Shown: positions 19,201 through 64,000, counted from the stretch's first letter. The stretch is 64,000 nt of DNA from Basidiobolus meristosporus CBS 931.73 (GCA_002104905.1 MCFE01000152.1:89079-153078); one strand, 5' to 3'. A program made the numbers and translations. Notes: generated from the letters alone by a model not told the origin.

Positions 19201-19398
19201 TTCCAGCTCCCTGACCTGGCACAAATCCAACGCCAGCCGGAGCCAGAAGCCACCAACGGAGATGCGGACCAGATGCAACTCACACCATTCAACCCCAGTG
19301 TCGGAAACCCGGATCAGATTGGGTACAGCGATGATGAGCTGGACAAGGACATGGAGATATCGATGTCGGATAGCAGATCAAGCCCGGATTTCATGTGA
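16205..19398 (+). CDS. UBP12: Ubiquitin C-terminal hydrolase of the USP4/15/Ubp12 type (DUSP + UBL + split catalytic domain); exons ~16205-16250, 16319-16589, 16689-19398
   Basis: DUSP-like YLLDFKWYEEW..PGPIDN; Cys box GLSNLGNTCFMNSALQ; QQHDSQEF; His box HYGGLGGGHYTA..WYNFDD..AYLLFY. Confidence 0.93.
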
Positions 19399-19649: not shown

Positions 19650-22600
19650 TTAGCGGTTGATCAAAAAGATATCACTCGATGTTGGTGGCTATTCTTTGGA
19701 GGCCAGGTGCCCGTTGTTCCTTTCGAACCAGTAGTCATTGGTAAACCTCCAAATCCTTGATCTCGTGTCCCGGTCTCGATCCTCAATAAACCATCGCGGG
19801 TGCCACTGGGCGCTTGGCGCAGGCCGTTTCTCGAGCTTCTGGTTTTCCAATCTACTCTTCTCTATCTGGCCATTTTCGAAGTATCTTATATCGTGCCGTA
19901 GCCTGGAGTCGGTGTCCGGCAGGTATGGGATTAACCCGATGGGCAGTTCGTTCAACGACATCATGAATGGGGAGATGATGCTCTGTTGACTCTCGACTCG
20001 CCAGAGTAGCCTCACACTAGGGTCGGCGGACGATAGGGTGCATGGACAGGTATCACTGGGGAAATCACTCAGCCGGTATTGGCTTAATGGCTTCACCTCC
20101 TCTTCGGTGTCTAGGCTGGAAACCATCTCCCGAGCCACCAGGTACTCATTCCATTTGCCGTACATTTCCCAAGTAATCTTACTGTCAGCTGATGCAACAT
20201 ACCCCTCAACCACGTTCATCTCGCCTTGCAGGGTGTGGGGCTTGAATCGCAAGAGGCACATTTCATTGGTGGTGTGATTCCTTATGATCATCTCTCCATA
20301 ATTCTCCACCTCCACAGCTCCCATAATGAGATTGTGGATTTTGGTGGTGACTCTATTCCAGCTGTAGCGCTCTTCCCTTCTAGGCCTCGTGGGATGGCTC
20401 GCCTCGTCAGCAGCAGTGGGAAGTCTTAGGTAAAGATGATTGGTCCCTTCGGCAGAGACATCAACGGATTTCCCGCGAAATTTGCTCTTCAGTTCCAATT
20501 CCGAATGTAATTTGTAGTTGACCGATTCGCAGTGGCTTGCAGAGATGGGCTGGTTCGCGAACGGAACAGGGAGTTGAGAAGGTGTCAACAGCACCACGAA
20601 GAGGAGAAAAACCACCTACCGGGTTTGTGCAAACCTGCTCGGACATATAGCGGTATCCCTTGTCTCGGTTTACGTATTCGTATGTTTCTCCCTGGGATGG
20701 CACGGATGGTAAGCACATGGAGTGGCATCCAAATTAACACTACTTACTAATAAAGGGTTGAATGGTTTTCGGAATCGTTTCTGGGTACTGGCGTAGCTGC
20801 TCATGGCGAATATCGTGACCCAGAGCAGACGCTCGGTAGAATCCTCTTGCGCGGCTGCCGTATCTAGAAGCTCACTGTATTCCATCTGCTCGGCAAATCT
20901 CTGCAACATCGACAGAGGCTCGTGTAGCTGAATGGGGAAGTTCATCCGATGGAGGTCCTTCACCATGGATCCTTTCATCACTGTCCACAGTGAGACGTCT
21001 TGGATATGGTAGAGTGGGATCGACAGGAGTTGCCGAAATTGAGTTGGATATCCGCTACTCGACCGTAGAATAGACCTACTCAGATTCTGGTTGAAATCCT
21101 GGAGCGACCTGATCATCTCGGTGGTCAACCCGGAGTCTGTGGCATCGTAGAACTCCTCTTCCACCTCCCCGGACGCTTCCGGGCTGCTTTGGTGCTCCAC
21201 ATTTCCTAGCACACCTGTCAGATCGGTATTTTCCGTACTTCTGAATACAGATTGTAACTGGTGGTTATCCGCGACCAACGCCCGGAAGCTCTCGGTCCAG
21301 ATATCCAACTGCCGCACCTCCCGGCGATACTTCTTGGACCAATACATCTCCCTTTCCGAGGCCATCCGGATCACCTCGCTGATGTGCTTTCGAATCTTCT
21401 TGAACGAATTTCGCAACCACACCTCGGTCTCTTTGTCCACGGGGCAATTCTTGTAGACCAAATCCATCCTGTCGCGATACCTTTCCCATTCGTTGAAAAC
21501 ACTGGAGACAGAGCAATGGTACTCCTCTGTGGTTGGGAGGTCGAGCTCTTCATCGGAAGAGTAGGAGTAGGTGGAGTCCTGGGTGGAGACAGAAGAGGCC
21601 CTTTTACTTTGTTCCCGTACGCTTCCAGTGGAGGAGGATTCAGATGTCTCCGGTGTGCTAGGGGAATTGCTATCGACACCAAGCTCTCTTCTGTTGCTAG
21701 GGGCTGCATCTGGGTCCTTCAAGTTTCCTTCGTCCAAACGTTGTTTGGATTTTGTCAATGCCAATACCCATCTTTTCACTTCCATCGCATGGTCAGCGCG
21801 TAAGCGGTACTTGGCAGTCCCAGGGCCAATAACATCAAACCTGGTAAGGTCGTTCGGGTCTATCCATATCCTGGCAAAGCGGAGGTTGATCGCTCCTCTG
21901 CAGGAGTTCTCCGCCTCGTGGCGGCTCTTGTAGTAGGACAGAACCCCTAGAGAATCCGAAGCATCAGAGGGACATATTCATCTCTCTATGACATATGAGG
22001 AAGCCCACCGTTTTCCAAAATGAACCAGCGTCGCTTGTAGCCGGTCGTGAAGTTCATCCACTTCATCAGGGTGCCTGACAGTCGAGGATGGTGCCCAGGG
22101 GCGTGCGGGTTTGAATCATTCGGCACTAGGTATAGTGATGTGGTTAGGCCCAAGAACTGCCCAGCATCTATGGGCGACTCAGTAATCTCATACCTTCCTT
22201 CAACACCCCTTTGACACGGTCGCTTCTAGCCACATCGATGGGCAACTTGCCCATTCTATCTCTTGCAAACACATTCGCCCCCCTCTGCATCAACCAGACC
22301 ACCAGGTCGGCATTTCCCAACCTGGCCGCCTCGTGTAGTGCGGTGGAACCGGTTCTGGGATCCTGAAGGTTGAGATCCACCAAGTTGCGCGTTCGATTGT
22401 TCTCGTAGAGCTTGGCTAAGCTGGCAAAATCCAGCTTCCTTACGAACTCGGCTACTCGTTGGTTAGTATAGCGTACAAACTCCTGCCTGTTTTCTGTGGA
22501 AAGCAGTGATGTTTCCGGTCAATGGATTAGTATCCCGGAGATGAATGGATTGATGTTAGACGGCCGTGAGGGGCGCGTGATTGCTGCAAATACCTTCTAT

Positions 22601-32593: not shown

Positions 32594-33748
32594 ATGGCTA
32601 CTACAGTGCCCTATGTAAAGGTTGAGAGCTCGGCCTATCAATTCCCATATGTCAACAATATCCTCAAGTCACAAAATCTCTTTGCCTCATCAGTTACCAG
32701 CATAGATTGTGACAAAGGTAACGACAGTCCTGAAACATGTATATACTTCAGAGCGGTACTAACTCAACCCATCTTTCTAACCTCAGATGATAGTATAAAG
32801 ACGAGTGTAACTTATGCACCATTCAATAGCTCAACAGCCACTGCAAAGAAGCTGGATTTGGAGCCTAATCCATTTGAGCAAAGCTTCCTTGCATCCTCGA
32901 GTCCAGGTAACAACGGTGTTACCGCAAGGAGTACGAACCTTCTACCACCTGTTTCATCACTTGAGAATCCTCAAAGCTCAGCTGAACTCGATTGGAACCA
33001 ATCCTTAAGAGCAGGACCTCTATCGCCCTCGATGTTGTTTGGTCCTCAACCAAGTGCCGCCAGGACTGCAATGAAACCTCAATCTTTCCTGACCAGTTCG
33101 ACAGGCTATAGCGATATCTCTTCTACCCCATTAGTCTCCGGCGATTTCCATGGACCCGTGCAGGCATATCATGATGGCGCCTCTAGCAAGCTAGCTCGCC
33201 CGGTTGTTACTGGTTGGGCAGAACCACTTGGGATTGACAGCAACAATATCCCAGGTTCAAACAAGCGCAAAAGCATCGACAGTAATATCTCCGATTGGAG
33301 CCCTGAGAGAGAGTTCTCCCGTCGTAGCAGTGTCGATGAAGTTGAATCCAAAGTGAAACCAGACATGACACCAGAGGAGAAACGTAAACTCTTCTTGGAA
33401 CGAAACAGAAAGGCCGCACTCAAATGCCGCCAACGTAAGAAGCAATGGCTAAATAATCTTCAGATCAAGGTGGACTATTTATCTCAAGAAAATGAGTCTT
33501 TGCAGACACAAGCCACCTGCCTGCGAGAAGAAATCATCAATTTGAAGACACTCCTTCTTGCCCACAAGGATTGTCCAGTAGCACAAGCAAATGGGGTTAT
33601 TGGGCTGGACAACCTTGTATCAACACTTGGTAACCAAACCTTAGAAATTCAACGGAGTCTTTCTTCAATGGATTCATCAAGATCTGATGTTGCTTTAAAC
33701 TCGGCCAGCCCAATAGGAATAATCCCCAATACCATCATCAGATTCTAG
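32594..33748 (+). CDS. ATF1: Atf1/Aft1/Sko1-family bZIP transcription factor; probable in-frame 69-bp intron at 32718-32786
   Basis: KLDLEPNPFEQSF (OSA-like), LRAGPLSPSML (HRA-like) and bZIP KRKLFLERNRKAALKCRQRKKQWL..LLAHKDCP. Confidence 0.9.
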   Translation: MATTVPYVKVESSAYQFPYVNNILKSQNLFASSVTSIDCDKGNDSPETCIYFRAVLTQPIFLTSDDSIKTSVTYAPFNSSTATAKKLDLEPNPFEQSFLASSSPGNNGVTARSTNLLPPVSSLENPQSSAELDWNQSLRAGPLSPSMLFGPQPSAARTAMKPQSFLTSSTGYSDISSTPLVSGDFHGPVQAYHDGASSKLARPVVTGWAEPLGIDSNNIPGSNKRKSIDSNISDWSPEREFSRRSSVDEVESKVKPDMTPEEKRKLFLERNRKAALKCRQRKKQWLNNLQIKVDYLSQENESLQTQATCLREEIINLKTLLLAHKDCPVAQANGVIGLDNLVSTLGNQTLEIQRSLSSMDSSRSDVALNSASPIGIIPNTIIRF

Positions 33749-36239: not shown

Positions 36240-36566
36240 TAATTACACCTAAATATTCACTTGGTCACTTACATCATGGTCATCAAATCTTCGATAATCC
36301 TGCCCAAATTCCTTGTCGGGATTTTGAATATTTTGACCAAAACATCAGGTACCTAGAACATGCAAAATTGTTAAGTTGTCCAAACAGCCCCAAACTTTGC
36401 ACACATGTTCTTGGGACCTTCCTAAGCATATTCTACATGCTTATTTTTCCCAGACCACATAAAACTATAAATACTACTTCTACATTCAATAAATCATTAA
36501 GTGAAAACCACATAATCTACTTGTTCTCCCAATCACTTGCAATATCTCCAAAACTCTTACAACAAC
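36240..36566 (+). repeat. Copy of the dispersed AT-rich repeat
   Basis: Aligns along its length with 12700-13035. Confidence 0.85.
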
Positions 36567-47347: not shown

Positions 47348-47682
47348 TAATTATACCTAAATATTCACCTAACTTAGTCACTTAGATCATTACATACAAA
47401 TATCGGAGAATACTGACCAAGTTCCTTGTCAGGATTTACTTGAAATATTTTGACCAAAACAGCAGGTACCCAGAGCATGAAAATTAGTTAAGTTGTCCAA
47501 GCTGCCCCATGCTTTTCACACATGTTCTTGGGGCCTTATTAAAATATTTACGGAATGTAAAAGTAGTATTTATACTTTTACATGGTCTTGGCAAAACAGA
47601 CCTGTGTAATATGTCTAAGTGAGAACCACATAATCCACTTGTTCTCCCAATTGCTTCACTATCTCCATAACTCTTACAACAG
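47348..47682 (+). repeat. Copy of the dispersed AT-rich repeat
   Basis: TATACCTAAATATTCACCTAACTTAGTCACTTAGATCATTAC..; retains the TGTAAAAGTA..TACTTTTACA hairpin. Confidence 0.85.
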
Positions 47683-52834: not shown

Positions 52835-53149
52835 CTGTTGTAAGAGTCTTGGAGATATTGGAAGTGATTGGTGGAACAAGTAGATTATGTGGTTTTCACT
52901 TTATGATTAATTGAATGTAAAAGTAGTATTTATACTCTTAACTGGTCTTGGCATTACAGACATGTAGAATAGGTTAAGGAAGGTCCCAAGAACATGTGTG
53001 CAGAGTTTGGGGCTGTTTGGACAACTTTGAGAATTTTCATTTGGTGGGTAGCTGGTATTTTGGTGAAAATATTCTAAGTAAATCCCAACAAGGAATTTGG
53101 TCAGTATTCCCTAGGATTTGAAGGTAATGAACTAAGAAACTAAGTTAGG
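52835..53149 (-). repeat. Copy of the AT-rich repeat cut at its TTAGG motif by the retroelement array
   Basis: Matches 5105-5217 up to CTAAGTTAGG, then switches to G10-AGAAAGTCACC. The expected TGAATATTTAGGTGG is absent. Confidence 0.85.
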
Positions 53150-54767
53150 GGGGGGGGAGAAAGTCACCAACAGGTGAAATCTTTATTTCAGTTGAAACAA
53201 AGAAGCCAGTGCTACTGTTGTAGCTTTGATACAAGAGTGTGTAGCTGAGGGGAATTTGTAGGTAAGTTAATAAGAAGTGATGATAGTTCTTCAGTGCTCA
53301 AGACACTGTTCAGTGGGAAGGGGGGTAGCAAGAGAGGTAAGAATGACTTGTGAAGAACATTAATGAGGGGAATGTGATAAGGATTGATATTCATCATAAA
53401 GGGAGTGTGCTGCTGCAGATATTGCTGCCAAAGGTCTGTCAAGTACTTCAGGTAGGCCAGCTTGGGTTTTTCTGACTGCAGAATATGTTGAGCAAACTTC
53501 TTGACTTCAGGATCTCCAAGTATAGTTCTCCAGCAGAGTCAGGTGTAGTGTGGTGTGTTCTTTTCCAGCCCTTAATCAGTGGATTGTTGCAGTTGTGAAG
53601 TCTGAGATATAATCTGGCTCTAAGGTAGAGAAGTCTGATCTTATAGGGCATAAACCCAAAAGCACCAAGAATAGCATGTCTGTAGGGGCATTCAGGCAAA
53701 TGAGGCACCAAGGAGGTAATGCACCATACTGCAAACTTGTCAAGCTTAGTGCAGTCTCTAGAGGTAAGAGAGAGAAGTGGTAAGCCAAATTCCAGGACAG
53801 GGAAGACAAACTGCTTGAGTAGAAGGAGGCAGCTGGGAGCTGAAGTTGTAGGAGGAGTAACAGCCAGTAGCTTGTGGAGTGCCTGTCTTGTCAGGATAAT
53901 TCTCTTCTTCAGGTGTGCTCCAGAGACTAGTCCAGTAGGAAGGAAAGGAAAGCCAAGATAGGTAGCAGAAATCTGAGCAGGTAGAGTGGAGTTCTCCAAG
54001 TTGATGGGAGAGCCCAAAGGTACTGTCTTTGCAATGGAAAGCTGGAGATTATTCTTCTGCAGATACTGGTGGATGGTCTGGGAGTCTTGTTGCACATTGG
54101 AGGAGGATATTCTGATGTCATCAGCAATGAGAGTAACCAGGCAGTCAGCTGAGAGTCTTGGGAAGTCATTCAGGAAGATGGCAAACAGTATAGGACCAAG
54201 CACAGAGCCTTGAATCACTCCATTAGGAACTGAGAACACAGCTGATTGCTCACTTGGGTGCAAAATTCTTGCTTGTGGATCCAGAAACAGAGACCTGACA
54301 AGGAGGGTGAGAGAGGTACTGGAGAAGCATTGCAACTTGGACCAAAGCAGATTTCTGTCAACTGAATCAAAGGCCTTAGTAATATCAAACTGAACAGAGG
54401 GATACTTGCACTGGAGAGAGTGATCTTGGCTAAGTATGACTGCATATTTCAAGGAAAGGCCAGGAACAAAGCCAAATTGTGCAGGGAGAAACTTGAGGGA
54501 GTCAGAATAGAGCTCCTGAGCAAGCAGAAGCTCAAACACCTTTCTGCAGGTGGGCAGCAGAGATATTGACCTGTAGGAGCTAGGATCCAGGTGCTTTCCT
54601 TTACCCTTGTACAGCAGCAGACCATTTGCAAAGGACCAGTCCTCAGGAGTAGAAAGCTGGGCTGAACATTGCTGAAACAGTGGAAGCAGAAGTGCAGACA
54701 TGGCCTTGGTACTAGTCTTCAGAAGCTCATAGGAGATTGTGTCCACACCTGGGGCAGTGGAGCTGGG
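53148..54767 (-). mobile_element. LINE family A, copy A1, 5'-truncated (RT + C-terminus, frameshift at ~53535)
   Basis: SYRSISLLPTCRKVFE, QFGF, FDITKAFDSVDR, GVIQGSVLGPILF, IADDI; near-identical to A2 and A3. Confidence 0.92.
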
Positions 54768-54947
54768 TTAGGGGAGGAAAGTCACCAAGTGGTGAAATCT
54801 TTATTTACTTATGACAAGTATCTAAAGAAGCCAAGTTAATCTGAAGTTATTCCTAGAAAGCTAGGTCTGAGAGATATCCTCCTGGTAAGCCAGGTCTGAG
54901 AGTTGAGAAGCTGAGTGGTACTATACTTCCTAGTTAGCCAGGTCTGA
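54768..54947 (-). mobile_element. SINE-like element C, copy C1, 3'-terminal 180 bp
   Basis: Near-identical to 62642-62822; begins TTAGGGGAGGAAAGTCACC on the + strand. Confidence 0.85.
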
Positions 54948-54954
54948 CAGTGCA

Positions 54955-55553
54955 TTAGGGGAGGGAAAGTCACCAAGTTGGTGAAATCTTTGTTTGAGTT
55001 AAGATCTAATCTAAGTACAAATAAAGAAGCCAATTAAGAGGTCTAGAACCTCTCTAATAAGTAATCTAATTTATGTTTTGTTTCCTCTCTAATGTTTGTT
55101 TCAATAAAGTAAAGCTCATCAGGGATAAATATAAAATTCAAGGGTTTTGGGTGAAGTACAAATTGTAGATGTTTCTGATCAATGTAATCCAAGACTGGAA
55201 CCCAGCCTGGGACTAGGTGTAGTGGGAAAGGTGTGTGAACTTGTAAGTAGCTCTGCCACATAGATTTAAGAAGGTCCTGAGCTAGTAGTCTTGGTTTTTC
55301 AGCTTTTTGAAGTTTTGAAGCAAGCTCTGTTACTACAGCAGAGCCAATCAGGATGAGCCAGCAAGAAGATTTCAGGGAGGAGTTAGATTTAAGCCATTGT
55401 TTGATGGAGGGGTTATGTGATTTCTGAAGTTTGACTAGGAAGGAAGCACGGAGATAGACCATTTGGATTTGGTATGGGTAGAACCCAAAGGCTCCATTAG
55501 TTGCATGGATATAGGTAGATACTGGAAGATAAGGTACCAAGGATCTGATACAC
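54955..55553 (-). mobile_element. LINE family B, copy B1, 3'-terminal 600 bp
   Basis: Near-identical to 58682-59281; encodes the ORF2 C-terminus ending ..LDYLLERF*. Confidence 0.9.
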
Positions 55554-58500
55554 TAAGGGGGGGAGACAGTCACCAACAGGTGAAATCTTTATTTCAGTTG
55601 AAACAAAGAAGCCAGCGCTACTGTTGTAGCTTTGATACAAGAGTGTGTAGCTGAGGGGAATGTGTAGGTAAGTTAATAAGAAGTGATGATAGTTCTTCAG
55701 TGCTCAAGACACTGTTCAGTGGGAAGGGGGGTAGCAAGAGAGGTAAGAATGACTTGTGAAGAACATTAATGAGGGGAGTGTGATAAGGATTGATATTCAT
55801 CATAAAGGGAGTGTGCTGCTGCAGATATTGCTGCCAAAGGTCTGTCAAGTACTGCAGGTAGGCCAGCTTGGGTTTTTCTGACTGCAAAATATGTTGAGCA
55901 AACTTCTTGACTTCAGGATCTCCAAGTATAGTTCTCCAGCAGGAGCCAGGTGTTGTGTGGTGTGTTCTCTTCCAGGCCTTAATCAGTGGGTTGTTGCAGT
56001 TGTGAAGTCTGAGGTATAATCTGGTTCTAAGGTAGCAAAGTCTGATCTTATAGGGCATAAACCCAAAAGCACCAAGAATAGCATGTCTGTAGGGGCATTC
56101 AGGCAAATGAGGCACCAAGGAGGTAATGCACCATACTGCAAACTTGTCAAGCTTAGTGCAGTCTCTAGAAATAAGAGAGAGAAGTGGTAAGCCAAATTCC
56201 AGGACAGGGAAGACAAACTGCTTGAGTAGAAGGAGGCAGCTGGGAGCTGAAGTTGTAGGAGGAGTAACAGCCAGTAGCTTGTGGAGTGCCTGTCTTGCCA
56301 GGATAATTCTCTTCTTCAGGTGTGCTCCAGAGTCTAGTCCAGTAGGAAGGAAAGGAAAGCCAAGATATGTAGCAGAAGCCTGAGCAGGTAGAGTGGAGTT
56401 CTCCAAGTTGATGGGAGAGCCCAAAGGTACTGTCTTTGCAATGGAAAGCTGGAGATTATTCTTCTGCAGATACTGGTGGATGGTCTGGGAGTCTTGTTGC
56501 ACATTGGAGGAGGATATTCTGATGTCATCAGCAAAGAGAGTAACCAGGCAGTCAGCTGAGAGTCTTGGGAAGTCATTCAGGAAGATGGCAAACAGTATAG
56601 GACCAAGCACAGAGCCTTGAACCACTCCATTAGGAACTGAGAACACAGCTGATTGCTTACTTGGGTGCAGAATTGTTGCTTGTGGATCCAGAAACAGAGA
56701 CCTGACAAGGAGGGTGAGAGAGGTACTGGAGAAGCATTGCAACTTGGACCAAAGCAGATTTCTGTCAACTGAATCAAAGGCCTTAGTAATATCAAACAGA
56801 ACAGAGGGATACTTGCACTGGAGAGAGTGATCTTGGCTAAGTATGACTGCATATTCCAAGGAGAGGCCAGGAACAAAGCCAAACTGTGCAGGATGAAACT
56901 TGAGGGAGTCAGAGTAGAGCTCCTGAGCAAGCAGAAGCTCAAACACCTTTCTGCAGGTGGGCAGCAGAGATATTGGCCTGTAGGAGCTGGATCTAGGTGC
57001 TTTCCTTTACCCTTGTACAGTGGCAGAACATTTGCAAAGGACCATTCCTCAGGGGTAGAAAGCTGGGCTGAGCATTGCTGAAACAGTGGAAGCAGAAGTG
57101 CAGACATGGCCTTGGTACTAGTCTTCAGAAGCTCATAGGAGATTGTGTCCACACCTGGAGCAGTAGAGTTGGGAAGCCTCTTGAGCACATTATGGATTCT
57201 CCTTTGATCAAGTGCAAGTGGAATGGGCAGAGTCTTGAAGTCAGGATGAAAGCCAGGAGTTGAGTACTGCTTTGTAGAGAAGAAGATGTTAGTCAGCTGT
57301 TCTGTTGAAGGTAACTTCCTGGAAGAGGGCCTCATTGCCCTGTAGAGTCTTGATACTGTTCTTGTTATAGAGTTGGAAGATTGCAGAGGCAAAGAACTCA
57401 TAATATGATCCCAGAGCTGAGTATGCAGTGTGTGGTGAATTGCCTTGGAGTGGTGTATTGCTGTCAGGAGGAGTTTCTCTGTTTTTGGGTTAGGGAAACT
57501 CAGGTAGCTTTGTTGCAGGGCTGAAACAATGGATTCCCATTTCTTGAGGTAACAGCAGTAGTCTTGCATGGCAGTGAGAGGGAGGCAGACACCAGAATCA
57601 GATGCTTCACAAAGTGCCAGGCATAGTTGAGATCATCTGGCAGAGAAAGTAGCACACTGGCAAGCTTCAAGTAGTTCCCAAAGTCTTTCTTCTGATTCTT
57701 GGTAGCTTTGTGGGTGAGCACAGTAAGTTTTGGCAGCTTCTTCTTCACAACTGGTTGCATAGAAAGGGACCAGGCTGGGTGGTCAGAGGCTCTCAAGGAT
57801 CCTAGCACAGCTCCAGAGAATTGCTTAACTTCATTCACAAAGTAGAGGGCAGCAGCAGAAGGGCAGATCCAGTCAACACATCTTTTCTCAGATTGAGCAC
57901 CTAGTGCTAGCAGGTGGCTTTCTCTCAGGAAGTTCAGTAGGAATGTAGACCTTGGCTTCATTCTTGCAGTCAGAGTAGTCTTGTTCTCAGGATGGGGAAT
58001 GTTGAGATCTCCAAGCAAGATAACAGGTGTTGATATAGATTGTTGGTATTGCTGAACCTTCTGGCATATAACTTGCACTTCCTGAAGGGCAAGACTTGGA
58101 GGCAGATAGCAGAGCACCAGACTGATAGTTGGCAACTGGAGAGCAGCACAGTAAGGGGAGTAAAGAGGAACACAGAGCTGAGGAGTATTGATGGTAGAAG
58201 AGATGAAGCAGATAGAGGAGGTATTCTTTGTTCTAGGAGTAGAAAAGCAATATAGATTAGTCAAAAGTATAGAGGGTAGCTGGACATCAATCAAACACAG
58301 GAGGGAAAATCTTGAAAGAAGTCTCTCTAGAGTTGGTCTTGATGGCTGTATGCTGTTGCAGTTAAGCAACAGAACTTCAGGTAGTCAGGCAGAGGTTGTA
58401 GCTTCTTCAGAGGCAGCATTGATAATGTGACCTGCAGAGTCCAGAGCTCTTCAAATGGTGCATCACTTAAGTCAGCAAGGAGGAAATGCATGATCTGAGG

Positions 58501-58675
58501 AAGTATGCACATCATAGAGGCTGTCTTGATGAGCAAGAAGACAGAATGGCAACATGGCTGAGCTGTTGAACAGTAGAGTCAGAGATCAGATCTCAGCATA
58601 TCTGAAGTCAGTTTCAGCAGTAAGTTCTCACAAAGCAACAAATGTCAGCAATGTGGTCTAGGATAACTCAGAGTC
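55554..58675 (-). mobile_element. LINE family A, copy A2: ORF1 C-terminal remnant plus frameshifted APE-RT ORF2
   Basis: EN motifs LLNCNSI, LIDVQ, CYLPP, LGDLN, CVDWI, SDHP; RT motif FADDI; ORF1 remnant APFEELW shared with family B. Confidence 0.92.
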
Positions 58676-58769
58676 TTAGGGTTAGGGGAGGGAAAGTCAC
58701 CAAGTTGGTGAAATCTTTATTTGAGTTAAGAACTAATCTAAGTACAAATAAAGAAGCCAATTAAGAGGT

Positions 58770-61619
58770 CTAGAACCTCTCTAATAAGTAATCTAATTTA
58801 TGTTTTGTTTCATCTCTAATGTTTGTTTCAATAAAGTAAAGCTCATCAGGGGTAAATATAAAATTCAGGGGTTTTGGGGGAAGTACAAATTGTAGATGTT
58901 TCTGATCAATATAATCCAAGACTGGAACCCAGCCTGGGATTAGGTGTAGTAGGAAAGGTGTGTGGACTTGTAAGTAGCTCTGCCACATAGATCTTAGATG
59001 GTCCTGAGCCAGTAGTCTTGGTTTCTCAGCTTTTTGAAGTTTTGAAGCAAGCTCTGTTACTACAGCAGAGCCAACCAGGGTGTGCCAGCAAGAAGATTTC
59101 AGGGAGGAGTTAGATTGAAGCCATTGTTTGATGGAGGGGTTATGTGATTTCTGAAGTTTGACTAGGAAGGAAGCACGGAGATAGATCATTCGGATTTGGT
59201 ATGGGTAGAACCCAAAGGCTCCATTAGTTGCATGGATATAGGGAGATACTGGAAGATAAGGTACCAAGGATCTGATACACTGATGGAGAAATTTATCCAG
59301 GCGGTGAAGTTCTCTGGAGGTTAGGGGTATAATGTGGAGACCAAATTCAAGTACCGGCAGTACATACTGCTTCAGAAGTATAGGGATCTTTTGAATTGGA
59401 GTGTCTGGAGTGACTACTACCAGAAGCTTTTTGAGAGCCTGTTGGGCAAGACGGATCCTATTATTCAGGTGGAGCTTTGAGTCAATCCCATGTTGACAAA
59501 ACGGCAGACCTAGATATATTGCAGTTTGTTGTGGCAGAATGCTAGTGTTCTGTATAGTTGTAGTGCATCCAATTGGGACTGTCTTGGAAATTGAGAGTGA
59601 GAGGTTGTTGGCAGCCAAGTACTTCTCAATGATGGCAGTGTCTGCTATGGGATTAGGAGTAGCAATCTTGATATCATCCGCATAGAGAGTTAGTAGTGGA
59701 TAGGGAGAGTCTGGTGAGGGGCCTTTTGGAAATAAAGGAAAGTCATGTAGGAATATCACAAATAGTAAGGGACCTAGTACAGATCCTTGGACTACTCCAT
59801 TTGGAACCTCATAAGTCTCTGATGTACAACTTGGATGCAAAATTTTGGCTGAGTTCTCACAAAATAGAGAACGTACAAGAAGGGTCATTGGTAGTGTGGT
59901 AACTGCTAATAGCTTTCTCCAAAGCAGAGCTCTGTCCACAGAGTCAAAGGCTTTAGTAATGTCAAACAGAATGGTTGGCAATGAGAATTGAAGTGAATGA
60001 TCATGGCTTAGCACTACAGCCATATCCAAGGAGAGTTTGGGCAAGAAGCCAAACTGAGAAGGATGGAATGGATATAGTTGAGATTGCAAGGATCTTGCTA
60101 TTATAAGCTCAAAGATTTTCCGGCAGGTTGGTAGGAGTGAAACTGGCCGGTAAGAACCTGGGAGTGAGTGTTTCCCCTTCCCTTTGTATAAGGGTATTAC
60201 ATTTGCCTGTGACCAGGCCTTTGGGGTAGTCAATTGTTGGGCACAGATAGAGTAGAATGGGAGAAGTAAGTGACTCATTTTGGAGTAGCACACCCGGAGT
60301 AGATTGTAGGTAATCAAGTCATGTCCAGGTGCAGTATTTGCAGGAAGCTTCTTTAAAATTTTCTCCAGAAGCTTTGCTGAAACCAAAATTGGAGATGTTG
60401 GACTGCTAGATATGTTACCAGTATGGTAGAAAGGAGGAGTGGGATGCATGGTTGAATCAAAGAATATAGGGGCCAGTTTGTCTGGTGATGGTATACTCCT
60501 TGCTTGGGGTCTCATGGCTTTGTATACTCTTGATATGGACCTTGTGGTGGCATTCATATTTACTAAGGGCAAGGTATCCATGATATGAGCCCATAATCTA
60601 GTATGCTCAGTGATCTGTAGTGACTTGGAGTAGGAGATTGCGCTTTCCAGGAGGTTCTGTGTTTTTGGGTTAGGGAAACATAGGTAGCTGGAATTTAAGG
60701 CAGAAATGATGGATTTCCATTTAAGTTGGTTTGCAGATGGCTTTTGGTAGGACTTGGTGGGCAGGGCCAGACAGCCAGTGATTATGATGAAATGCTGGTA
60801 AAATAGCCATAATGCATTTATATCATCACAAATCCATGCAGGTAAGCTGGGAAATGCATATTCTGTAAGCAAGGATAGGTAGTTGGCAAAGTCCTGTGTC
60901 TGTGATACTGAAGCTTTGGCTGGCAGGATTGTAAATGGCTGAAGAAGGGTGCCAATTGGTAGGGTTTTTCTGGCAGAAATGATAATATGTATTGGCTTGT
61001 GATCAGATTTCTCTAGTGAACCACAGCTGATATCCTCTGGAATGCTTGTAACCTGGTGGATGTACTGTAAGGCAGCTGGAGTAGCTGTTACCCAGTCAAC
61101 ACAACGTTGAGCTTGCTGAGTGTTTACAGTGACCAGATGGTTTTGTCGGAGGAACTTTGTAAAGTGCTCCTCTCGGGTTCTAAGTCTGGATGAAATAGTG
61201 GTGATATTTTCAGGGTGGGGAATATTTATATCTCCCACTACCATACAAGGGATTGATGAGCTGTTAATGAATTCTGATGTGGCCAAGAAAATTGCCAGTG
61301 TTATGGAGTTAGACAGAGATGGAGGGAGATAGATAATAATGGCTACTATAGTTGGAAGTGTTAGAGCATAGCAGTAATACTCATAGATGATGGATACATT
61401 TGCTGAGGGTGCAAGCTTAGAAGATGAAAGAGCAACAAGTGCCATTGAGTGAGCTGGAAATTTTGGGTGAGCAGATGAATATGCATTCAGTCTAGAGGGA
61501 AGTTTTGGCAACTTAACATCAATTAGTAGGAGCAAGGAATATTCCTTTTTCAGTAAGTTTTCTAATTCAGCTACAGTTGGAGTGATGGAGTTGCAATTGA
61601 GTAAGAGTATGTTCTGTAG
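58770..61619 (-). CDS. B2 ORF2: AP-like endonuclease + reverse transcriptase, ~949 aa, no initiator ATG ahead of the first EN motif
   Basis: LQNILLLNCNSI..LIDVK..IYLPP..VGDIN..CVDW..SDHKP; SYRPVSLLPTCRKIFE; FDITKAFDSVDR; QGSVLGPLLF; YADDI. Confidence 0.9.
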   Translation of the reverse strand, partial: LQNILLLNCNSITPTVAELENLLKKEYSLLLLIDVKLPKLPSRLNAYSSAHPKFPAHSMALVALSSSKLAPSANVSIIYEYYCYALTLPTIVAIIIYLPPSLSNSITLAIFLATSEFINSSSIPCMVVGDINIPHPENITTISSRLRTREEHFTKFLRQNHLVTVNTQQAQRCVDWVTATPAALQYIHQVTSIPEDISCGSLEKSDHKPIHIIISARKTLPIGTLLQPFTILPAKASVSQTQDFANYLSLLTEYAFPSLPAWICDDINALWLFYQHFIIITGCLALPTKSYQKPSANQLKWKSIISALNSSYLCFPNPKTQNLLESAISYSKSLQITEHTRLWAHIMDTLPLVNMNATTRSISRVYKAMRPQARSIPSPDKLAPIFFDSTMHPTPPFYHTGNISSSPTSPILVSAKLLEKILKKLPANTAPGHDLITYNLLRVCYSKMSHLLLPFYSICAQQLTTPKAWSQANVIPLYKGKGKHSLPGSYRPVSLLPTCRKIFELIIARSLQSQLYPFHPSQFGFLPKLSLDMAVVLSHDHSLQFSLPTILFDITKAFDSVDRALLWRKLLAVTTLPMTLLVRSLFCENSAKILHPSCTSETYEVPNGVVQGSVLGPLLFVIFLHDFPLFPKGPSPDSPYPLLTLYADDIKIATPNPIADTAIIEKYLAANNLSLSISKTVPIGCTTTIQNTSILPQQTAIYLGLPFCQHGIDSKLHLNNRIRLAQQALKKLLVVVTPDTPIQKIPILLKQYVLPVLEFGLHIIPLTSRELHRLDKFLHQCIRSLVPYLPVSPYIHATNGAFGFYPYQIRMIYLRASFLVKLQKSHNPSIKQWLQSNSSLKSSCWHTLVGSAVVTELASKLQKAEKPRLLAQDHLRSMWQSYLQVHTPFLLHLIPGWVPVLDYIDQKHLQFVLPPKPLNFIFTPDELYFIETNIRDETKHKLDYLLERF

Positions 61620-62417
61620 TCAGGCAGACTCTGAGGTTGCCTGTTCCTGCTGAAACTCTTGCACTGCCCTTTGTAAATTTCCAGAATTATTCCACAACTC
61701 TTCAAATGGAGCTTGCGTAATGTCTTTCAGGATTCTAATTGCTTCCTCTTTCAAGAAGTAGGCCACATCATAGGTTGGAGCCTGTTTCTTAATGGCAGCA
61801 AAGAAAGCCATAATTGCCATGTGAGCTGGGGGCTTGTTGAATATTCCTGGCTCAGTGTCCATTGACTCTGGTGGAATGATTGTGAATTTGGTAGGCACCC
61901 AGTTTAGATTTTTTGCCAGATACTTAGTCAATGCAGTGGAGAAGTTTCTGTCTACAATCATTTCTAGGATCTTTCCTCTTCTCCAAGCTAGGTTAACAAT
62001 TTTTGAAGTGTCAATATTTAGAGAGCGGAATGTATGTCTGATGTTTGATATAGTAGTCCATGGAACATTGGCAAAGTATAGCAAGGACCAATTCTGGAGC
62101 TGAGGTAAGTTTGCTGGAGGCTTATAGGTAGACTTCCTGGCAGGTTGTGTGGTAGGCTTTAGTGTTTCCAAGGTAGCAAGTTGTGGTTGAGACTTTTTGG
62201 AATTACGTATGACTTTGGAAAGAATTCTGCCAGCAACTGTGTCAGGAATGTTAGTACTCATTGATGGTGCAGGGCCTGGCTCCTGGTACTGCTTTTGTAG
62301 AATACTTGAGTATGTCTCTTTTTGTTTTCCTTTATCCAATGTGCTATGCCTTGGAATGGGATTTTGGGGAATAGAGACTTCAGGTATCAACTCTGGGGTC
62401 TGGTGATTGTCCAACAT
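61620..62417 (-). CDS. B2 ORF1 (gag-like, putative nucleic-acid binding)
   Basis: Open 265 aa directly upstream of ORF2. The core LYFANV..IRHTFRSLNIDTSKIVNLAW..ILEMIV resembles LINE ORF1 proteins; a coiled-coil-like remnant lies upstream in another frame. Confidence 0.7.
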   Translation of the reverse strand: MLDNHQTPELIPEVSIPQNPIPRHSTLDKGKQKETYSSILQKQYQEPGPAPSMSTNIPDTVAGRILSKVIRNSKKSQPQLATLETLKPTTQPARKSTYKPPANLPQLQNWSLLYFANVPWTTISNIRHTFRSLNIDTSKIVNLAWRRGKILEMIVDRNFSTALTKYLAKNLNWVPTKFTIIPPESMDTEPGIFNKPPAHMAIMAFFAAIKKQAPTYDVAYFLKEEAIRILKDITQAPFEELWNNSGNLQRAVQEFQQEQATSESA

Positions 62418-62641
62418 TGTTGCTTGAGCTTCAGCTTTTCCTCTAAGATTTGAACTCTCTGCTTAAGCTCATCATTTGATGCTATAAGTGTTGCATTGTT
62501 TGGAGCCAGGTCAGGTGTTGAGTTATGAAGCAGGTTGAGCAGCGTTCTAACTCCTTTGTTTGGTCATCCAACTTTTCTTCTAAGGTTGAACCTCAATTGA
62601 GTGCACATTTGAGGTTAGAAGCTCAAGTTATCAGCTTAGGG

Positions 62642-63165
62642 TTAGGGGGGAGGAAAGTCACCAAGTGGTGAAATCTTTATTTACTTATGACAAGTATCTA
62701 AAGAAGCCAAGTTAATCTGAAGTTATTCCTAGAAAGCTAGGTCTGAGAGATATCTTCCTGGTAAGCCAGGTCTGAGAGTTGAGAAGCTGAGTGGTACTAT
62801 ATTTCCTAGTTAGCTAGGTCTGAGAGAGGTTTCCTGGAAAGCCAGGCCTGAGAAGTGAGAATCTGAATATATCTGAGCTAAGTTATACTGGTTTGCAGTA
62901 GCTGAATTGTGGCCGGAATGGCCAGTAGACTGGGGGAACTGAGATGAATTTCTGGGCGATCACTGGCCAAATTTACTAGGCAAATCTGGCCAATTAGCAT
63001 TTCAAGGATTTCAGCCAATCAGAGCCTTTACTTTGCCCGATGGTTGATCAAGCCATCTCCCAATGAGCACACATCAATTTATTAATCAAATTTTGCTGGA
63101 TCCAGGATTTGAACCCACAACCATGGGTATGGAAGGGTTAGGGATAACCACAAGGCTAAGTTAAG
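62642..63165 (-). mobile_element. SINE-like element C, copy C2, apparently full length (~520 bp): tRNA-type A/B boxes, hairpin-rich body and LINE-type 3' tail
   Basis: A box TAGCCTTGTGG (63158-63148) and B box GGTTCAAATCC (63115-63105), 32 nt apart. No long ORF, and the 3' end is shared with A and B. Confidence 0.75.
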
Positions 63166-63187
63166 AAGTCCAAGTGTGAATCATTGA

Positions 63188-64000
63188 TTAGGGGGGGAGA
63201 CAGTCACCAACAGGTGAAATCTTTATTTCAGTTGAAACAAAGAAGCCAGCGCTACTGTTGTAGCTTTGATACAAGAGTGTGTAGCTGAGGGGAATTTGTA
63301 GGTAAGTTAATAAGAAGTGATGATAGTTCTTCAGTGCTCAAGACACTGTTCAGTGGGAAGGGGGGTAGCAAGAGAGGTAAGAATGACTTGTGAACAACAT
63401 TAATGAGGGGAATGTGATAAGGATTGATATTCATCATAAAGGGAGTGTGCTGCTGCAGATATTGCTGCCAAAGGTCTGTCAAGTACTTCAGGTAGGCCAG
63501 CTTGGGTTTTTCTGACTGCAGAATAAATTCAGCAAACTTCTTGACTTCAGGATCTCCAAGTATAGTTCTCCAGCAGGAGCCAGGTGTTGTGTGGTGTGTT
63601 CTCTTCCAGGCCTTAATCAGTGGGTTGTTGCAGTTGTGAAGTCTGAGGTATAATCTGGTTCTAAGGTAGAGAAGTCTGATCTTATAGGGCATAAACCCAA
63701 AAGCACCAAGAATAGCATGTCTGTAGGGGCATTCAGGCAAATGAGGCACCAAGGAGGTAATGCACCATACTGCAAACTTGTCAAGCTTAGTGCAGTCTCT
63801 AGAAGTAAGAGAGAGAAGTGGTAAGCCAAATTCCAGGACAGGGAAGACAAACTGCTTGAGTAGAAGGAGGCAGCTGGGAGCTGAAGTTGTAGGAGGAGTA
63901 ACAGCCAGTAGCTTGTGGAGTGCCTGTCTTGCTAGGATAATTCTCTTCTTCAGGTGTGCTCCAGAGTCTAGTCCAGTAGGAAGGAAAGGAAAGCCAAGAT
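63188..64000 (-). mobile_element. LINE family A, copy A3, 3' part; continues beyond the window
   Basis: Near-identical to A1/A2; junction TTAGGGGGGGAGACAGTCACC. Confidence 0.92.

What the first reader, a model, noticed from the sequence alone, without database searches (positions are those of the whole stretch)
53145..64000. Head-to-tail array of retroelements, each joined through the telomeric repeat TTAGGG: candidate telomere-targeting or telomere-extending system
Seen: seven elements (A1, C1, B1, A2, B2, C2, A3), all on the minus strand with no host DNA between them. Junctions on the + strand are TTA-G10 (53145), TTAGGGG (54768), TTAGGGG (54955), TAA-G7 (55554), TTAGGG-TTAGGGG (58676), TTAGGG-TTAGGGGGG (62636) and TTA-G7 (63188). 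Known: TTAGGG is the common fungal telomere repeat and its G strand runs toward the chromosome end, so each element would lie 3'-proximal and 5'-distal, as for Drosophila HeT-A/TART. Fungal telomere-associated elements I know of (MoTeR of Magnaporthe, Cnl1 of Cryptococcus, Coprina Penelope-like elements) do not use an APE endonuclease; APE telomere targeting is known from insect TRAS/SART. Inference: RNA ending ..CCCUAA anneals to a G-strand 3' end and primes reverse transcription, so these LINEs target or extend chromosome ends.
Basis: partly seen in the sequence, partly recalled or inferred. Interest (0 to 1): 0.93.

Follow-up and report, generated by a model that had tools for sequence, protein, structure and literature searches.

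The report
Telomere-tailed LINE/SINE stack at chromosome end
The last 11 kb of this Basidiobolus contig is a one-way stack of jumping genes (two LINE families and a SINE) whose RNAs end in the telomere's own repeat rather than poly(A); the same stacks sit under the telomerase-made cap at many chromosome ends of this fungus, a set-up so far known mainly from insects.

Summary
Seven elements (A1, C1, B1, A2, B2, C2, A3) lie head-to-tail on the minus strand from 53145 to the contig end. Each 3' end is joined to the next element through TTA plus a G-run, with 0-6 further telomeric bases.

The host is a Basidiobolus fungus with a TERT gene and (TTAGGG)n ends. Genome-wide, the shared 3' module occurs about 1,570 times. 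All 20 sampled copies lie within 8 kb of the contig end that their antisense strand points to. All four contig termini I could read carry 135-243 bp of TTAGGG directly on the outermost element.

- A and B are LINEs with an APE-type endonuclease and a reverse transcriptase. A2 and B2 are full length.
- C is a SINE-like passenger that shares their 3' module: two hairpins, AAUAAA, a C-run and UAA(CCCUAA).
- Proximal copies are more diverged than distal ones.
- Relatives in independent public assemblies keep the same tail.

Best reading: a telomere-dedicated retroelement guild that grows outward at chromosome ends alongside telomerase. Whether the endonuclease nicks or a bare end primes is unresolved.

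I found no published description. Other windows of this scan flagged the same system on other contigs of this genome.

The parts
52836..53144 (+). Dispersed 310-bp repeat that forms the base of the array. In other copies the sequence runs on as ...CTAA(A/G)TTAGGTG/TTATGTG... Here the array starts at that internal TTAGG-like site.
   Evidence: At least 50 copies at 92-96% identity on other contigs. Further copies in the window at 12721-13029, 36260-36564, 6330-6638 and 47373-47681. Comparison with L002 and L003.
53145..54767 (-). A1: 5'-truncated copy of LINE family A (C-terminal part of the RT). Tail on + strand is TTA-G10.
   Evidence: 97.1% identical to A2 over A positions 4-1620. RVT_1 E=2.6e-21.
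54768..54954 (-). C1: 5'-truncated copy of SINE-like family C. Tail is TTAGGGG.
   Evidence: 96.8% identical to C2 positions 4-191.
54955..55553 (-). B1: 5'-truncated copy of LINE family B. Tail is TTAGGGG, preceded by a 4-base filler TGCA.
   Evidence: 96.3% identical to B2 positions 7-606.
55554..58675 (-). A2: full-length family A element (3.12 kb). It has EN (ORF piece 57503-58384) and RT (55618-56946), is broken into three overlapping ORFs by frame changes, and has no ORF1. Tail is TAA-G7.
   Evidence: All 39 other scored genomic copies reach the same 5' terminus at 58675-58677. Pfam RVT_1 3.7e-21 and weak Exo_endo_phos/Exo_endo_phos_2. EN motifs.
58676..62635 (-). B2: full-length family B element (3.96 kb). 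It has an ORF1 remnant with stops (about 61620-62420) and an open EN-RT frame at 58770-61619 (EN about 60975-61610, RT about 59571-60173, YADD present). Tail is TTAGGG-TTAGGGG.
   Evidence: 11 other copies end at the same 5' base, 62635. Translations. Pfam. ORF1 similarity of 45-60% to the ORF1 of L067, L069 and L074.
62636..63187 (-). C2: SINE-like element (552 bp) with no ORF. Near its 5' end it has pol III A-box-like and B-box-like motifs (+ strand about 63100-63160). It contains two internal 65-bp repeats and the shared 3' module. Tail is TTAGGG-TTAGGGGGG.
   Evidence: Copies 96-99% identical at other ends. The boxes were read by eye. ARAGORN and Rfam do not call a tRNA.
63188..64000 (-). 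A3: family A copy cut off by the contig end. Tail is TTA-G7.
   Evidence: 98.5% identical to A2 positions 3-813. The contig ends at window base 64000.
55554..55625 (-). Example of the shared 3' module (RNA sense): hairpin 1 (GCUUCUUU...AAAUAAAGA, which includes AAUAAA), hairpin 2 (UCACC-loop-GGUGA), a pyrimidine stretch, a C-run and UAA. The same module is at 53145-53215, 54768-54840, 54955-55030, 58676-58750, 62636-62705 and 63188-63260.
   Evidence: Folds with z = -3.6 to -4.3 for four of the five 3' ends folded; the fifth (family B, whose hairpin-1 5' arm lay outside the stretch given) reached z = -1.9. 12-lineage alignment with invariant stems and co-varying inner pairs.

Best explanation
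This is the inner part of a chromosome-end array built by a guild of telomere-dedicated non-LTR retroelements of Basidiobolus. The guild comprises LINE family A (EN-RT only), LINE family B (ORF1 plus EN-RT) and the SINE-like family C, which borrows their 3' module. Elsewhere in the genome there is also an ORF1-only family D. Their RNAs end in a conserved module: two hairpins, a C-run, then UAA(CCCUAA), which is the C-strand telomere repeat, in place of poly(A). The most likely mechanism has four steps. (1) The RT binds the hairpin module. (2) The CCCUAA end pairs with a G-strand 3' end that has lost nearly all of its telomerase tract. (3) The RT copies the RNA outward, often incompletely. (4) Telomerase re-caps the new end with (TTAGGG)n. 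Repeated rounds, perhaps with template jumps from one RNA to the next, give a head-to-tail stack with 3' ends toward the centromere and the youngest copies outermost. What is shown: the anatomy, the terminal location and orientation, the short junctions, the capping, the age gradient, the shared module and the coexistence with TERT. What is inferred: the RNA 3' end, the pairing and priming step, and whether the conserved endonuclease supplies the 3'-OH or is needed only for another step.
For: Location and orientation:
- (TTAGGG)4 gives 7604 forward and 81 reverse hits, and the 3' motif 1446 forward and 124 reverse hits. Reversed-pattern controls give 0-13.
- 20 of 20 sampled family A copies lie 0.08-7.6 kb from the contig end that their antisense strand points to.

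Capping:
- All 4 contig termini I hold (C1, C21, C22, C23) carry 135-243 bp of TTAGGG directly on a truncated or full-length element.

Junctions:
- All 37 junctions have a G-run of 3-10, and 32 have TTA before it.
- Only 0-6 further telomeric bases follow, never more than 9 in perfect register, often overlapping the native end of the proximal element.
- Illumina unitigs of the source sample show more than 100 different joints between a truncated body and a 3' end, with fillers such as TAGGG, AGG and TTAG.

Age:
- Proximal A copies are more diverged in 10 of 11 within-contig pairs; my exact permutation gives p about 0.01.

Retrotransposition hallmarks:
- Every copy has an intact 3' end and variable 5' truncation. 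Full-length A and B share defined 5' termini.

Shared module:
- The 3' module is conserved in 12 lineages, including Logan and ENA contigs from other samples. These also end in CCCCCTAACCCTAA and are joined head-to-tail.

Other:
- A TERT RNA-binding domain is present.
- The array base here sits at an internal TTAGG of a dispersed repeat, as expected for healing at a microhomology.
Against: - No RNA data exist, so the transcript's 3' end is unknown. The invariant AAUAAA suggests cleavage and polyadenylation, which would need internal initiation of reverse transcription.
- The EN catalytic motifs (N, D for the usual E, Y, GDxN, VDW, SDH) are invariant across six members that are only 39-61% identical. 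This argues that the endonuclease is in use, and pure end-priming would not need it.
- About a third of proximal neighbours are full length with exact 5' ends. Simple erosion between additions does not predict this; it needs immediate re-addition or template jumping.
- An identical junction in C2 and C23 shows that recombination also moves array segments.
- The age test rests on 16 copies in 9 contigs.
Confidence: 0.62

Rival explanations
1. Endonuclease-dependent, sequence-specific insertion of the TRAS/SART or Tx1-1_ACar type. The APE endonuclease nicks the G strand of duplex telomeric DNA, either in the terminal tract or in the short telomere-like tail of a resident element. Ordinary target-primed reverse transcription then inserts the new copy, and arrays arise because each insertion recreates the target.
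For: EN catalytic motifs are invariant in six diverged members, with weak but repeated Pfam APE matches. Head-to-tail stacks with 1-2 repeat units at each junction and microhomology at 5' junctions are also what tail-targeted insertion would give. SART1Bm is an experimentally shown APE LINE that targets telomeric repeats (PMC7265360).
Against: No junction keeps more than 9 telomeric bases, although terminal tracts are 135-243 bp. A nick at a random repeat would leave long proximal tracts, and SART1Bm needs at least 3 repeats. Insertion next to a resident element's tail predicts that the proximal member of a pair is the younger, but the opposite is seen in 10 of 11 pairs. There are no insertions at the 11 TTAGGG sites in the other 53 kb of the window, nor at the internal GGGTTAGGG of A2 and B2 in this window. 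Apart from one 3'-truncated B fragment on C636, no fragment lacking its 3' end was found.
Confidence: 0.26
2. The arrays are spread and lengthened mainly by recombination between chromosome ends (break-induced replication, as in ALT), with retrotransposition only an occasional seeding event.
For: The same A-truncation junction (…GTAGGTAAGGGTTAGGGGGG) occurs in C2 and C23. C636 and C427 share the subtelomeric repeat next to their arrays. Copies are 97-99% alike.
Against: The order, truncation points and fillers differ between all the ends examined. More than 100 distinct joints appear in short-read unitigs. Each copy has its own 5' truncation but an intact 3' end, which is the mark of separate reverse-transcription events.
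Confidence: 0.07
3. Ordinary LINEs and SINEs with a short-repeat tail that only happens to resemble the telomere repeat, accumulating passively in gene-poor subtelomeres; or an assembly artefact.
For: Other LINE clades (CR1, L2) end in short tandem repeats behind a hairpin (my own knowledge). The window's contig stops inside a repeat.
Against: The tail is the exact C-strand repeat, in the strict telomere orientation, and all 20 sampled copies sit at the ends. Terminal tracts cap the elements directly. The same junction types appear in Illumina unitigs and in unrelated public assemblies.
Confidence: 0.03

Closest known systems
TRAS and SART (R1 clade) of Bombyx and other insects; Tx1-1_ACar of the anole lizard
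   Same: APE-type LINEs dedicated to telomeric repeats, coexisting with telomerase-type repeats. TRAS has the same sense-strand orientation (element sense = C strand; my own knowledge).
   Different: Those elements have poly(A) tails, insert at a fixed base inside long repeat tracts and need several repeats (PMC7265360). Here the tail is itself the telomere repeat, junctions hold at most 1.5 extra units, and no SINE partner is known for those families. Clade relationship was not tested.
HeT-A, TART and TAHRE of Drosophila
   Same: Head-to-tail terminal arrays with 3' ends proximal, added outward. Several cooperating families, including ones that lack one ORF (family A lacks ORF1, family D has only ORF1). 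The outward strand is G-rich (143 G3+ runs against 28 C3+ runs; compare PMC10088271).
   Different: Drosophila has no telomerase or short repeats, and its junctions are oligo(A). Here TERT and 135-243 bp TTAGGG caps coexist with the arrays, and the elements end in CCCTAA.
Endonuclease-deficient Penelope-like elements Athena (bdelloid rotifers) and Coprina (fungi)
   Same: 3' ends carry the reverse complement of the telomere repeat, thought to pair with G-overhangs. They lie at chromosome termini (my own knowledge; PMC8557442 abstract).
   Different: Those have a PLE/TERT-like RT and no endonuclease. Here there is a LINE-type RT (RVT_1, F/YADD) behind a conserved N-terminal APE endonuclease.
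MoTeR (Magnaporthe), FoTeR (Fusarium) and Cnl1 (Cryptococcus): fungal telomeric non-LTR elements of the CRE clade
   Same: Fungal, telomere-associated, non-LTR, with telomeric motifs at junctions (PMC12857005, PMC7367193).
   Different: Those carry a C-terminal restriction-enzyme-like endonuclease (CCHC...RHD...). No such motif is present here, and the endonuclease is an N-terminal APE type. They sit inside telomere tracts with 3-8 repeats at the 3' side.
Zepp (Chlorella) and GilM/GilT (Giardia)
   Same: Terminal arrays of LINEs in which the outermost 5'-truncated copy is capped directly by telomerase repeats (my own knowledge; listed in PMC10088271).
   Different: Poly(A)-type tails. No telomeric RNA tail and no SINE partner have been reported.
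Stringent LINE/SINE pairs such as eel UnaL2/UnaSINE1 (L2 clade)
   Same: The SINE shares the LINE's 3' hairpin and short-repeat tail, which the RT recognises (my own knowledge).
   Different: Those insert genome-wide, and their tail repeat is unrelated to the telomere.

Membership tests
APE-type non-LTR retrotransposon (LINE) | N-terminal apurinic-endonuclease-like domain with catalytic N, E/D, Y, D-N, D and D-H motifs | tested here: met
   Pfam Exo_endo_phos and Exo_endo_phos_2 matches are weak (one at the cut-off). The motifs LNCNS, LIDV, YLPPS, GDxNxxHPEN, RCVDW and SDH are invariant in the members that include that part of the domain, across six proteins 39-61% identical. D replaces the usual E.
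APE-type non-LTR retrotransposon (LINE) | LINE-type reverse transcriptase with F/YxDD | tested here: met
   RVT_1 E = 1e-20 to 4e-27. YADD or FADD present. Nearest solved RT is human L1 ORF2p, E = 2.5e-11.
APE-type non-LTR retrotransposon (LINE) | Copies with intact 3' ends and variable 5' truncation, and no LTRs | tested here: met
   all A, B and C copies start at library position 11 or lower and end anywhere.
TRAS/SART (R1 clade telomeric LINEs) | Insertion inside long telomeric repeat tracts, with repeats on both flanks | tested here: not met
   Junctions hold at most 9 telomeric bases beside the G-run. Long tracts occur only at the very terminus.
TRAS/SART (R1 clade telomeric LINEs) | Poly(A) tail | tested here: not met
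   The tail is C(3-10)TAA with an optional CCCTAA. There are no A-runs.
TRAS/SART (R1 clade telomeric LINEs) | RT groups within the R1 clade | not testable with these tools
   No labelled reference set was available. The nearest distant relatives carry Exo_endo_phos_2 + RVT_1 (one with RNase H), and Atlas structure neighbours are arthropod, flatworm and chordate LINEs. These are leads only.
Drosophila-type terminal retrotransposons (HeT-A/TART/TAHRE) | Head-to-tail arrays at the physical chromosome end, 3' end proximal | tested here: met
Drosophila-type terminal retrotransposons (HeT-A/TART/TAHRE) | Replace telomerase (no TERT, no short repeats) | tested here: not met
   TERT RBD at C935 scores 40.5 and 34.7 bits against a cut-off of 25. 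Terminal tracts are 135-243 bp of TTAGGG.
EN-deficient Penelope-like elements (Athena/Coprina) | PLE-type RT without endonuclease | tested here: not met
   An APE domain is present and conserved, and the RT is a LINE-type RVT_1.
CRE-clade fungal telomeric elements (MoTeR/FoTeR/Cnl1) | C-terminal restriction-enzyme-like endonuclease with CCHC and RHD/N motifs | tested here: not met
   No CCHC or RH[DN] motif in five ORF2 proteins, and no Pfam match.
SINE (family C) | Short, non-coding, with an internal pol III promoter and a 3' end shared with a partner LINE | tested here: inconclusive
   The 3' module shared with A and B is met, and the element has no ORF and a length of 534-552 bp. A-box-like (TAGCCTTGTGG) and B-box-like (GGTTCAAATCC) motifs were read by eye. 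ARAGORN and Rfam find no tRNA.

The most novel reading that the evidence does not exclude
A telomerase-positive fungus has independently evolved a Drosophila-like division of labour at its chromosome ends. The guild comprises an ORF2-only LINE (A), a complete LINE (B), an ORF1-only element (D) and a SINE (C). All of them carry an RNA tail that mimics the telomerase template. Together they act as a routine second telomere-maintenance and end-healing system on the roughly 200 or more chromosome ends of Basidiobolus, rather than as mere parasites of the subtelomere.
Probability: 0.3. Interest if true: 0.9.

Novelty: new variant of a known kind. Interest (0 to 1): 0.8.

Why it matters
Telomere-dedicated retrotransposons are known from a handful of lineages. 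The fungal ones described so far use a restriction-like endonuclease or none. This one combines three traits not reported together:
- an APE-type LINE;
- a 3' tail that is the telomere C-strand repeat, otherwise a hallmark of endonuclease-free Penelope-like elements;
- a set of dependent partners, namely a SINE, an ORF1-only element and an ORF2-only element.

It does so in an organism that still has telomerase. That makes it a natural intermediate between telomerase-only ends and the Drosophila retrotransposon-only ends. It offers a culturable fungus in which to test how an RT is recruited to a chromosome end and whether such elements help heal broken or worn ends. It may also bear on the many chromosome ends in this assembly, roughly 200 or more telomere-bearing contig ends by my estimate.

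Tried and rejected
- **EN structure:** AlphaFold2 on the 6-row alignment gave mean pLDDT 44, so no fold search was run. phmmer of the EN part against PDB sequences found nothing relevant.
- **SINE head:** ARAGORN and Rfam (E up to 1) found no tRNA, 5S or 7SL. The only Rfam row (HYMAI, E = 0.088) is chance.
- **Clade of the RT:** cluster names, Atlas names and the Pfam content of distant hits gave no labelled clade. No reference set could be brought in, so no tree was built.
- **Wider occurrence:** two pattern scans of JGI metagenome contigs found nothing. In 1.84 billion representative proteins only about 5 clusters are close kin (47-64% identity). After that comes a drop to generic LINE RTs at about 30%.
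- **Expression:** no RNA run holds the element. The runs laid were contigs only, so no transcript ends could be read.
- **Genome census:** As a result I could not count ends, map all 1,570 modules, or look up the 38-bp insert.
- **Consensus sequences:** I built no consensus and repaired no frame, as the genome tool asks. Ages were compared by pairwise distances only.
- **Artefact and passive accumulation:** the assembly-artefact and passive-accumulation readings were rejected (see rivals).


Full report
**Observation.**
- Each is followed on the + strand by the same motif: AGTCACCAA, 2-5 bases, GGTGAAATCTT. The motif occurs seven times in the 64-kb window, always on the + strand and only between 53162 and 63202.
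- BLAST of the region against A2, B2 and C2 shows that every copy begins at the element's 3' end and stops at a different point. The copies are A1 (53145-54767, 1.6 kb), C1 (54768-54954), B1 (54955-55553), A2 (55554-58675), B2 (58676-62635), C2 (62636-63187) and A3 (63188 to the end).
- TTAGGG as a bare hexamer is not enriched in the window (23 found, 30 expected). The signal is its placement: 12 copies on the + strand and none on the - strand inside the array, with one at each 3' end.
- The window is G000:C427:89079-153078 and the contig stops at the last window base, inside A3. The distal side therefore cannot be read here.

**Host and chromosome ends.**
- The genes in the rest of the window are fungal: Kre9/KNH, an Aft1-type bZIP, an HMG box, OSBP and a USP. 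The USP ORF is 87% identical to a Basidiobolus ranarum protein and 54% to a B. meristosporus paralogue.
- The assembly has 89,489,060 bases in 1366 contigs. It holds 7604 forward and 81 reverse matches to (TTAGGG)4, lying at contig ends. From roughly 33 overlapping matches per 220-bp tract I estimate 200 or more telomere-bearing ends; this is an inference.
- A telomerase RNA-binding domain (PF12009) is encoded on C935 at 40.5 and 34.7 bits against a cut-off of 25. The fungus therefore has ordinary telomerase telomeres.

**The elements are confined to those ends.**
- The 3' motif occurs 1446 times forward and 124 times reverse, with none for the reversed control. The listed hits cluster in the last few to about 20 kb of contigs that finish in TTAGGG tracts, or in the first kb for reverse hits.
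- For 20 family A copies picked only by similarity to A2's 5' part, the contig length places all 20 between 0.08 and 7.6 kb from the end that their antisense strand points to.
- The four termini I could read (C1, C21, C22, C23) carry 213, 243, 221 and 135 bp of TTAGGG. The tract is set directly on a 5'-truncated or full-length element with no other DNA between.

**What the elements are.**
- A and B have a LINE-type reverse transcriptase (RVT_1, E about 1e-21; F/YADD present) behind an N-terminal APE-type endonuclease.
- The Pfam endonuclease matches are weak. However, an alignment of six members only 39-61% identical keeps every catalytic motif: LNCNS, LIDV (D in place of the usual E), YLPPS, GDxNxxHPEN, RCVDW and SDH.
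- There is no CCHC or RHD restriction-like endonuclease motif.
- A2 and B2 are full length. All 39 other scored A copies share A2's 5' terminus, and 11 B copies share B2's, while other B copies are truncated at various points.
- B has an ORF1 region (coiled coil, N-terminal Cys motif), which is degenerate in B2. A is 3.1 kb and has no ORF1, although its relatives P0002-P0004 (58-65% identical in the RT) have an ORF1 of 437-500 residues.
- C is a 534-552 bp non-coding element. Near its 5' end it has A-box-like and B-box-like motifs, read by eye; ARAGORN and Rfam find no tRNA. Its 3' end is the same as that of the LINEs.
- Outside the window, a family D has an ORF1-like ORF that stops about 95 bases before the shared 3' module, so it is an ORF1-only partner.
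- A copies from different ends are 97-99% alike, which points to recent activity.

**The shared 3' module.** In RNA sense, all families end in the following order:
- hairpin 1, GCUUCUUU...AAAUAAAGA, which contains AAUAAA;
- hairpin 2, UCACC-loop-GGUGA;
- a pyrimidine stretch;
- a C-run of 3-10;
- UAA, sometimes followed by CCCU or CCCUAA.

Four of the five 3' ends folded do so far better than shuffles (z = -3.6 to -4.3). The fifth, family B, reached only z = -1.9, but the 5' arm of its hairpin 1 lay outside the stretch given. In an alignment of 12 lineages the stems are nearly invariant. The loop of hairpin 1 varies from 4 to about 30 bases, and its inner pairs co-vary (GC, AU, CG, UG).

Five of these lineages come from Logan and ENA contigs of other samples. 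These also end in CCCCCTAACCCTAA, and one contig (L069) shows three elements joined head-to-tail through that tail. The telomeric tail is thus an old, conserved trait of this LINE lineage. The lineage is otherwise isolated: among 1.84 billion representative proteins only about five clusters are close kin before a drop to about 30% identity.

**Junctions.**
- In the 37 junctions I hold, the G-run is 3-10 long and 32 have TTA before it. The perfect telomeric register continues for a total of 3 to 9 bases and never more; one junction has about four degenerate units.
- Where the proximal neighbour is a known family, its last bases often double as the start of the telomeric string (T, TT, TTA, TTAG, GGG), which is microhomology. 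After full-length A2 and B2 there is exactly one extra TTAGGG.
- Short-read unitigs from the source sample show more than 100 different joints between a truncated body and an element 3' end, with fillers such as TAGGG, AGG, TTAG and TA. The junction pattern is therefore not a long-read assembly artefact.
- The base of this window's array sits at the edge of a dispersed 310-bp repeat. Other copies of that repeat continue ...CTAA(A/G)TTAGGTG or TTATGTG, so the first element was attached at an internal TTAGG-like site.
- In C21 a SINE sits directly on a copia-like fragment and is capped by the terminal tract.

**Direction of growth.** For 16 family A copies, I compared the median pairwise distance to the other copies over the 3' 560 bases with the distance from the contig end.
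- C1: 0.081, 0.030, 0.020 at 22.8, 18.2 and 3.2 kb.
- C2: 0.027, 0.023, 0.013.
- C3: 0.025, 0.013.
- This window: 0.029 (A1), 0.027 (A2), 0.018 (A3).
- C22 alone is slightly reversed.

Ten of 11 within-contig pairs are concordant. By my exact enumeration of within-contig orderings this has p about 0.01. The outermost copies are the youngest.

**Mechanism.** The anatomy fits reverse transcription that starts on a G-strand 3' end paired with the CCCUAA end of the RNA and runs outward, followed by re-capping by telomerase.
- *Against nicking at a random repeat.* A model in which the endonuclease nicks a random repeat of the terminal tract is hard to hold, for three reasons. Junctions never retain more than 1.5 extra units although terminal tracts are 135-243 bp. 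Array bases have no residual tract. The experimentally studied SART1Bm needs at least three repeats (PMC7265360).
- *Against insertion into a resident tail.* A second model has new copies insert into the short tail of a resident element. It explains the junctions equally well, but it predicts that the proximal member of a pair is the younger, which is the opposite of what is seen.
- *What does not fit simple end-priming.* The conserved endonuclease motifs argue that the enzyme is used. The many full-length proximal neighbours with exact 5' ends are not what erosion between additions would give. They suggest immediate re-addition or template jumping from the 5' end of one RNA to the tail of the next.
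- *Recombination.* The same junction occurs in C2 and C23, so recombination also moves array segments.

I therefore put about 0.6 on outward addition at nearly bare ends and about 0.25 on endonuclease-dependent targeted insertion. The priming step and the RNA 3' end remain inferred; no RNA run was available.

**Strand composition.** The element sense strand has only 15-17% G, and the ORF2 proteins only 2.1-2.8% glycine. The outward + strand of the array has 143 G3+ runs against 28 C3+ runs, compared with 423 against 421 in the rest of the window. The array thus continues the G-richness of the telomeric G strand, as reported for other telomeric retrotransposons (PMC10088271).

**Comparison with known systems.**
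- It works like TRAS/SART and like HeT-A/TART/TAHRE, but it fails defining features of both. It has no poly(A), it does not insert within long tracts, and telomerase is present.
- It shares the telomere-complementary 3' end with the endonuclease-free Penelope-like elements Athena and Coprina, but it has a LINE RT and an APE endonuclease.
- The fungal telomeric elements described so far (MoTeR, FoTeR, Cnl1) belong to the CRE clade with a restriction-like endonuclease (PMC12857005), which is absent here.
- Zepp and GilM/GilT share the capped truncated outermost copy.
- Stringent LINE/SINE pairs such as UnaL2/UnaSINE1 share the logic of a common 3' hairpin.
- The RT clade could not be assigned. 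The nearest distant relatives have Exo_endo_phos_2 + RVT_1, one with RNase H, and the nearest solved RT is human L1 ORF2p.

**Novelty.** Full-text searches for Basidiobolus with telomere, and for telomeric retrotransposons in Zoopagomycota, found no description. Reviews list no fungal APE-type telomeric LINE. The scan itself has flagged and followed up the same system on other contigs of this genome, with the same reading. I tested the claims independently here. I class it as a new variant of a known kind.

**Limits.**
The census rests on 37 junctions, 20 located copies and 4 termini.
- No transcript data exist.
- The endonuclease structure could not be modelled (pLDDT 44).

Noticed in passing
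L034:1488-2328 (G000:C14:165027-165867); also L037, L039, L042, L016: Family D (hairpin-2 loops TACCTT, TACTTT, TGCTTT, TCCTTT). An ORF with a coiled coil and a C-terminal domain, 27-30% identical to the LINE ORF1, ends about 95 bases before the shared 3' module. It is therefore an ORF1-only partner, the mirror image of the ORF1-less family A. All copies I held are 5'-truncated.
   Followed up: partly
L027/L028 region (G000:C2:257441-259990); L036:1-1490 (G000:C21): Pieces of LTR retrotransposons lie inside or under the arrays. One is a gypsy-like RNase H/integrase ORF between a family D 3' module and a family A tail. Another is a copia-like fragment directly under a SINE that is capped by the terminal tract. 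Possible causes are template switching to other RNAs or healing of ends broken inside LTR elements.
   Followed up: no
L020:1690-1727 (G000:C1, about 344852-344889): A 38-bp non-telomeric insert (TGAGTGATGTAAGATGCC...TTTTAA) sits inside the terminal TTAGGG tract of C1. Its origin is unknown. One idea, that telomerase read through into its RNA beyond the template, could not be checked because the genome search had closed.
   Followed up: partly
whole assembly G000: Telomere tracts (7604 to 81) and 3' modules (1446 to 124) lie almost only on the + strand of contigs, so nearly every telomere-bearing contig has its telomere at the right-hand end and none at the left. Many contigs are about 20 kb or about 170 kb long. 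Whether this comes from how the assembly was built or from the biology is unexplained.
   Followed up: no
window 57487-57497 and 60667-60677 (+ strand GGGTTAGGG); L069:5630-5645: ORF2 of both LINE families encodes the conserved FPNPK with CCCTAACCC, which is 1.5 telomere units in the telomere orientation. In an external contig a copy truncated exactly there is fused to the tail of the next element. No element is inserted at these internal sites in the window.
   Followed up: partly
window 53145-64000 against 1-52835: There is extreme strand asymmetry. The element sense strand has 15-17% G, the ORF2 proteins have 2.1-2.8% glycine, and the + strand has 143 G3+ runs against 28 C3+ runs. No strict four-run G-quadruplex motif with loops of 7 or fewer bases was found.
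   Followed up: yes
L002:1500-2420 (G000:C636:79940-80860): A second contig carries the same 310-bp repeat, followed 205 bp later by an array that begins with a B fragment lacking its 3' end. This is a related subtelomere with a different, rearranged array base.
   Followed up: partly
G000:C2 about 260113 and G000:C23 about 16746: The identical junction (an A copy truncated at ...GTAGGTAAG followed by GGTTAGGGGGG and an A 3' end) occurs on two contigs. This suggests that array segments are copied between chromosome ends.
   Followed up: no
window 56313-56570 and 57228-57410: A 2022 run filed under another organism label (X5) holds two short contigs 95-99% like family A at depth 2-3. This may be a related strain or a Basidiobolus trace in another sample.
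   Followed up: no
window 766-1605 (-), 16783-19398 (+), 19689-21785 (-), 32594-33748 (+), 9749-10591 (+): The rest of the window holds ordinary content: a tnp2/CACTA-type transposase fragment, a USP-type deubiquitinase, an oxysterol-binding protein split by an intron or frame change, an Atf1-like bZIP and an HMG-box protein. Unique genes therefore run to within about 2 kb of the array base.
   Followed up: partly
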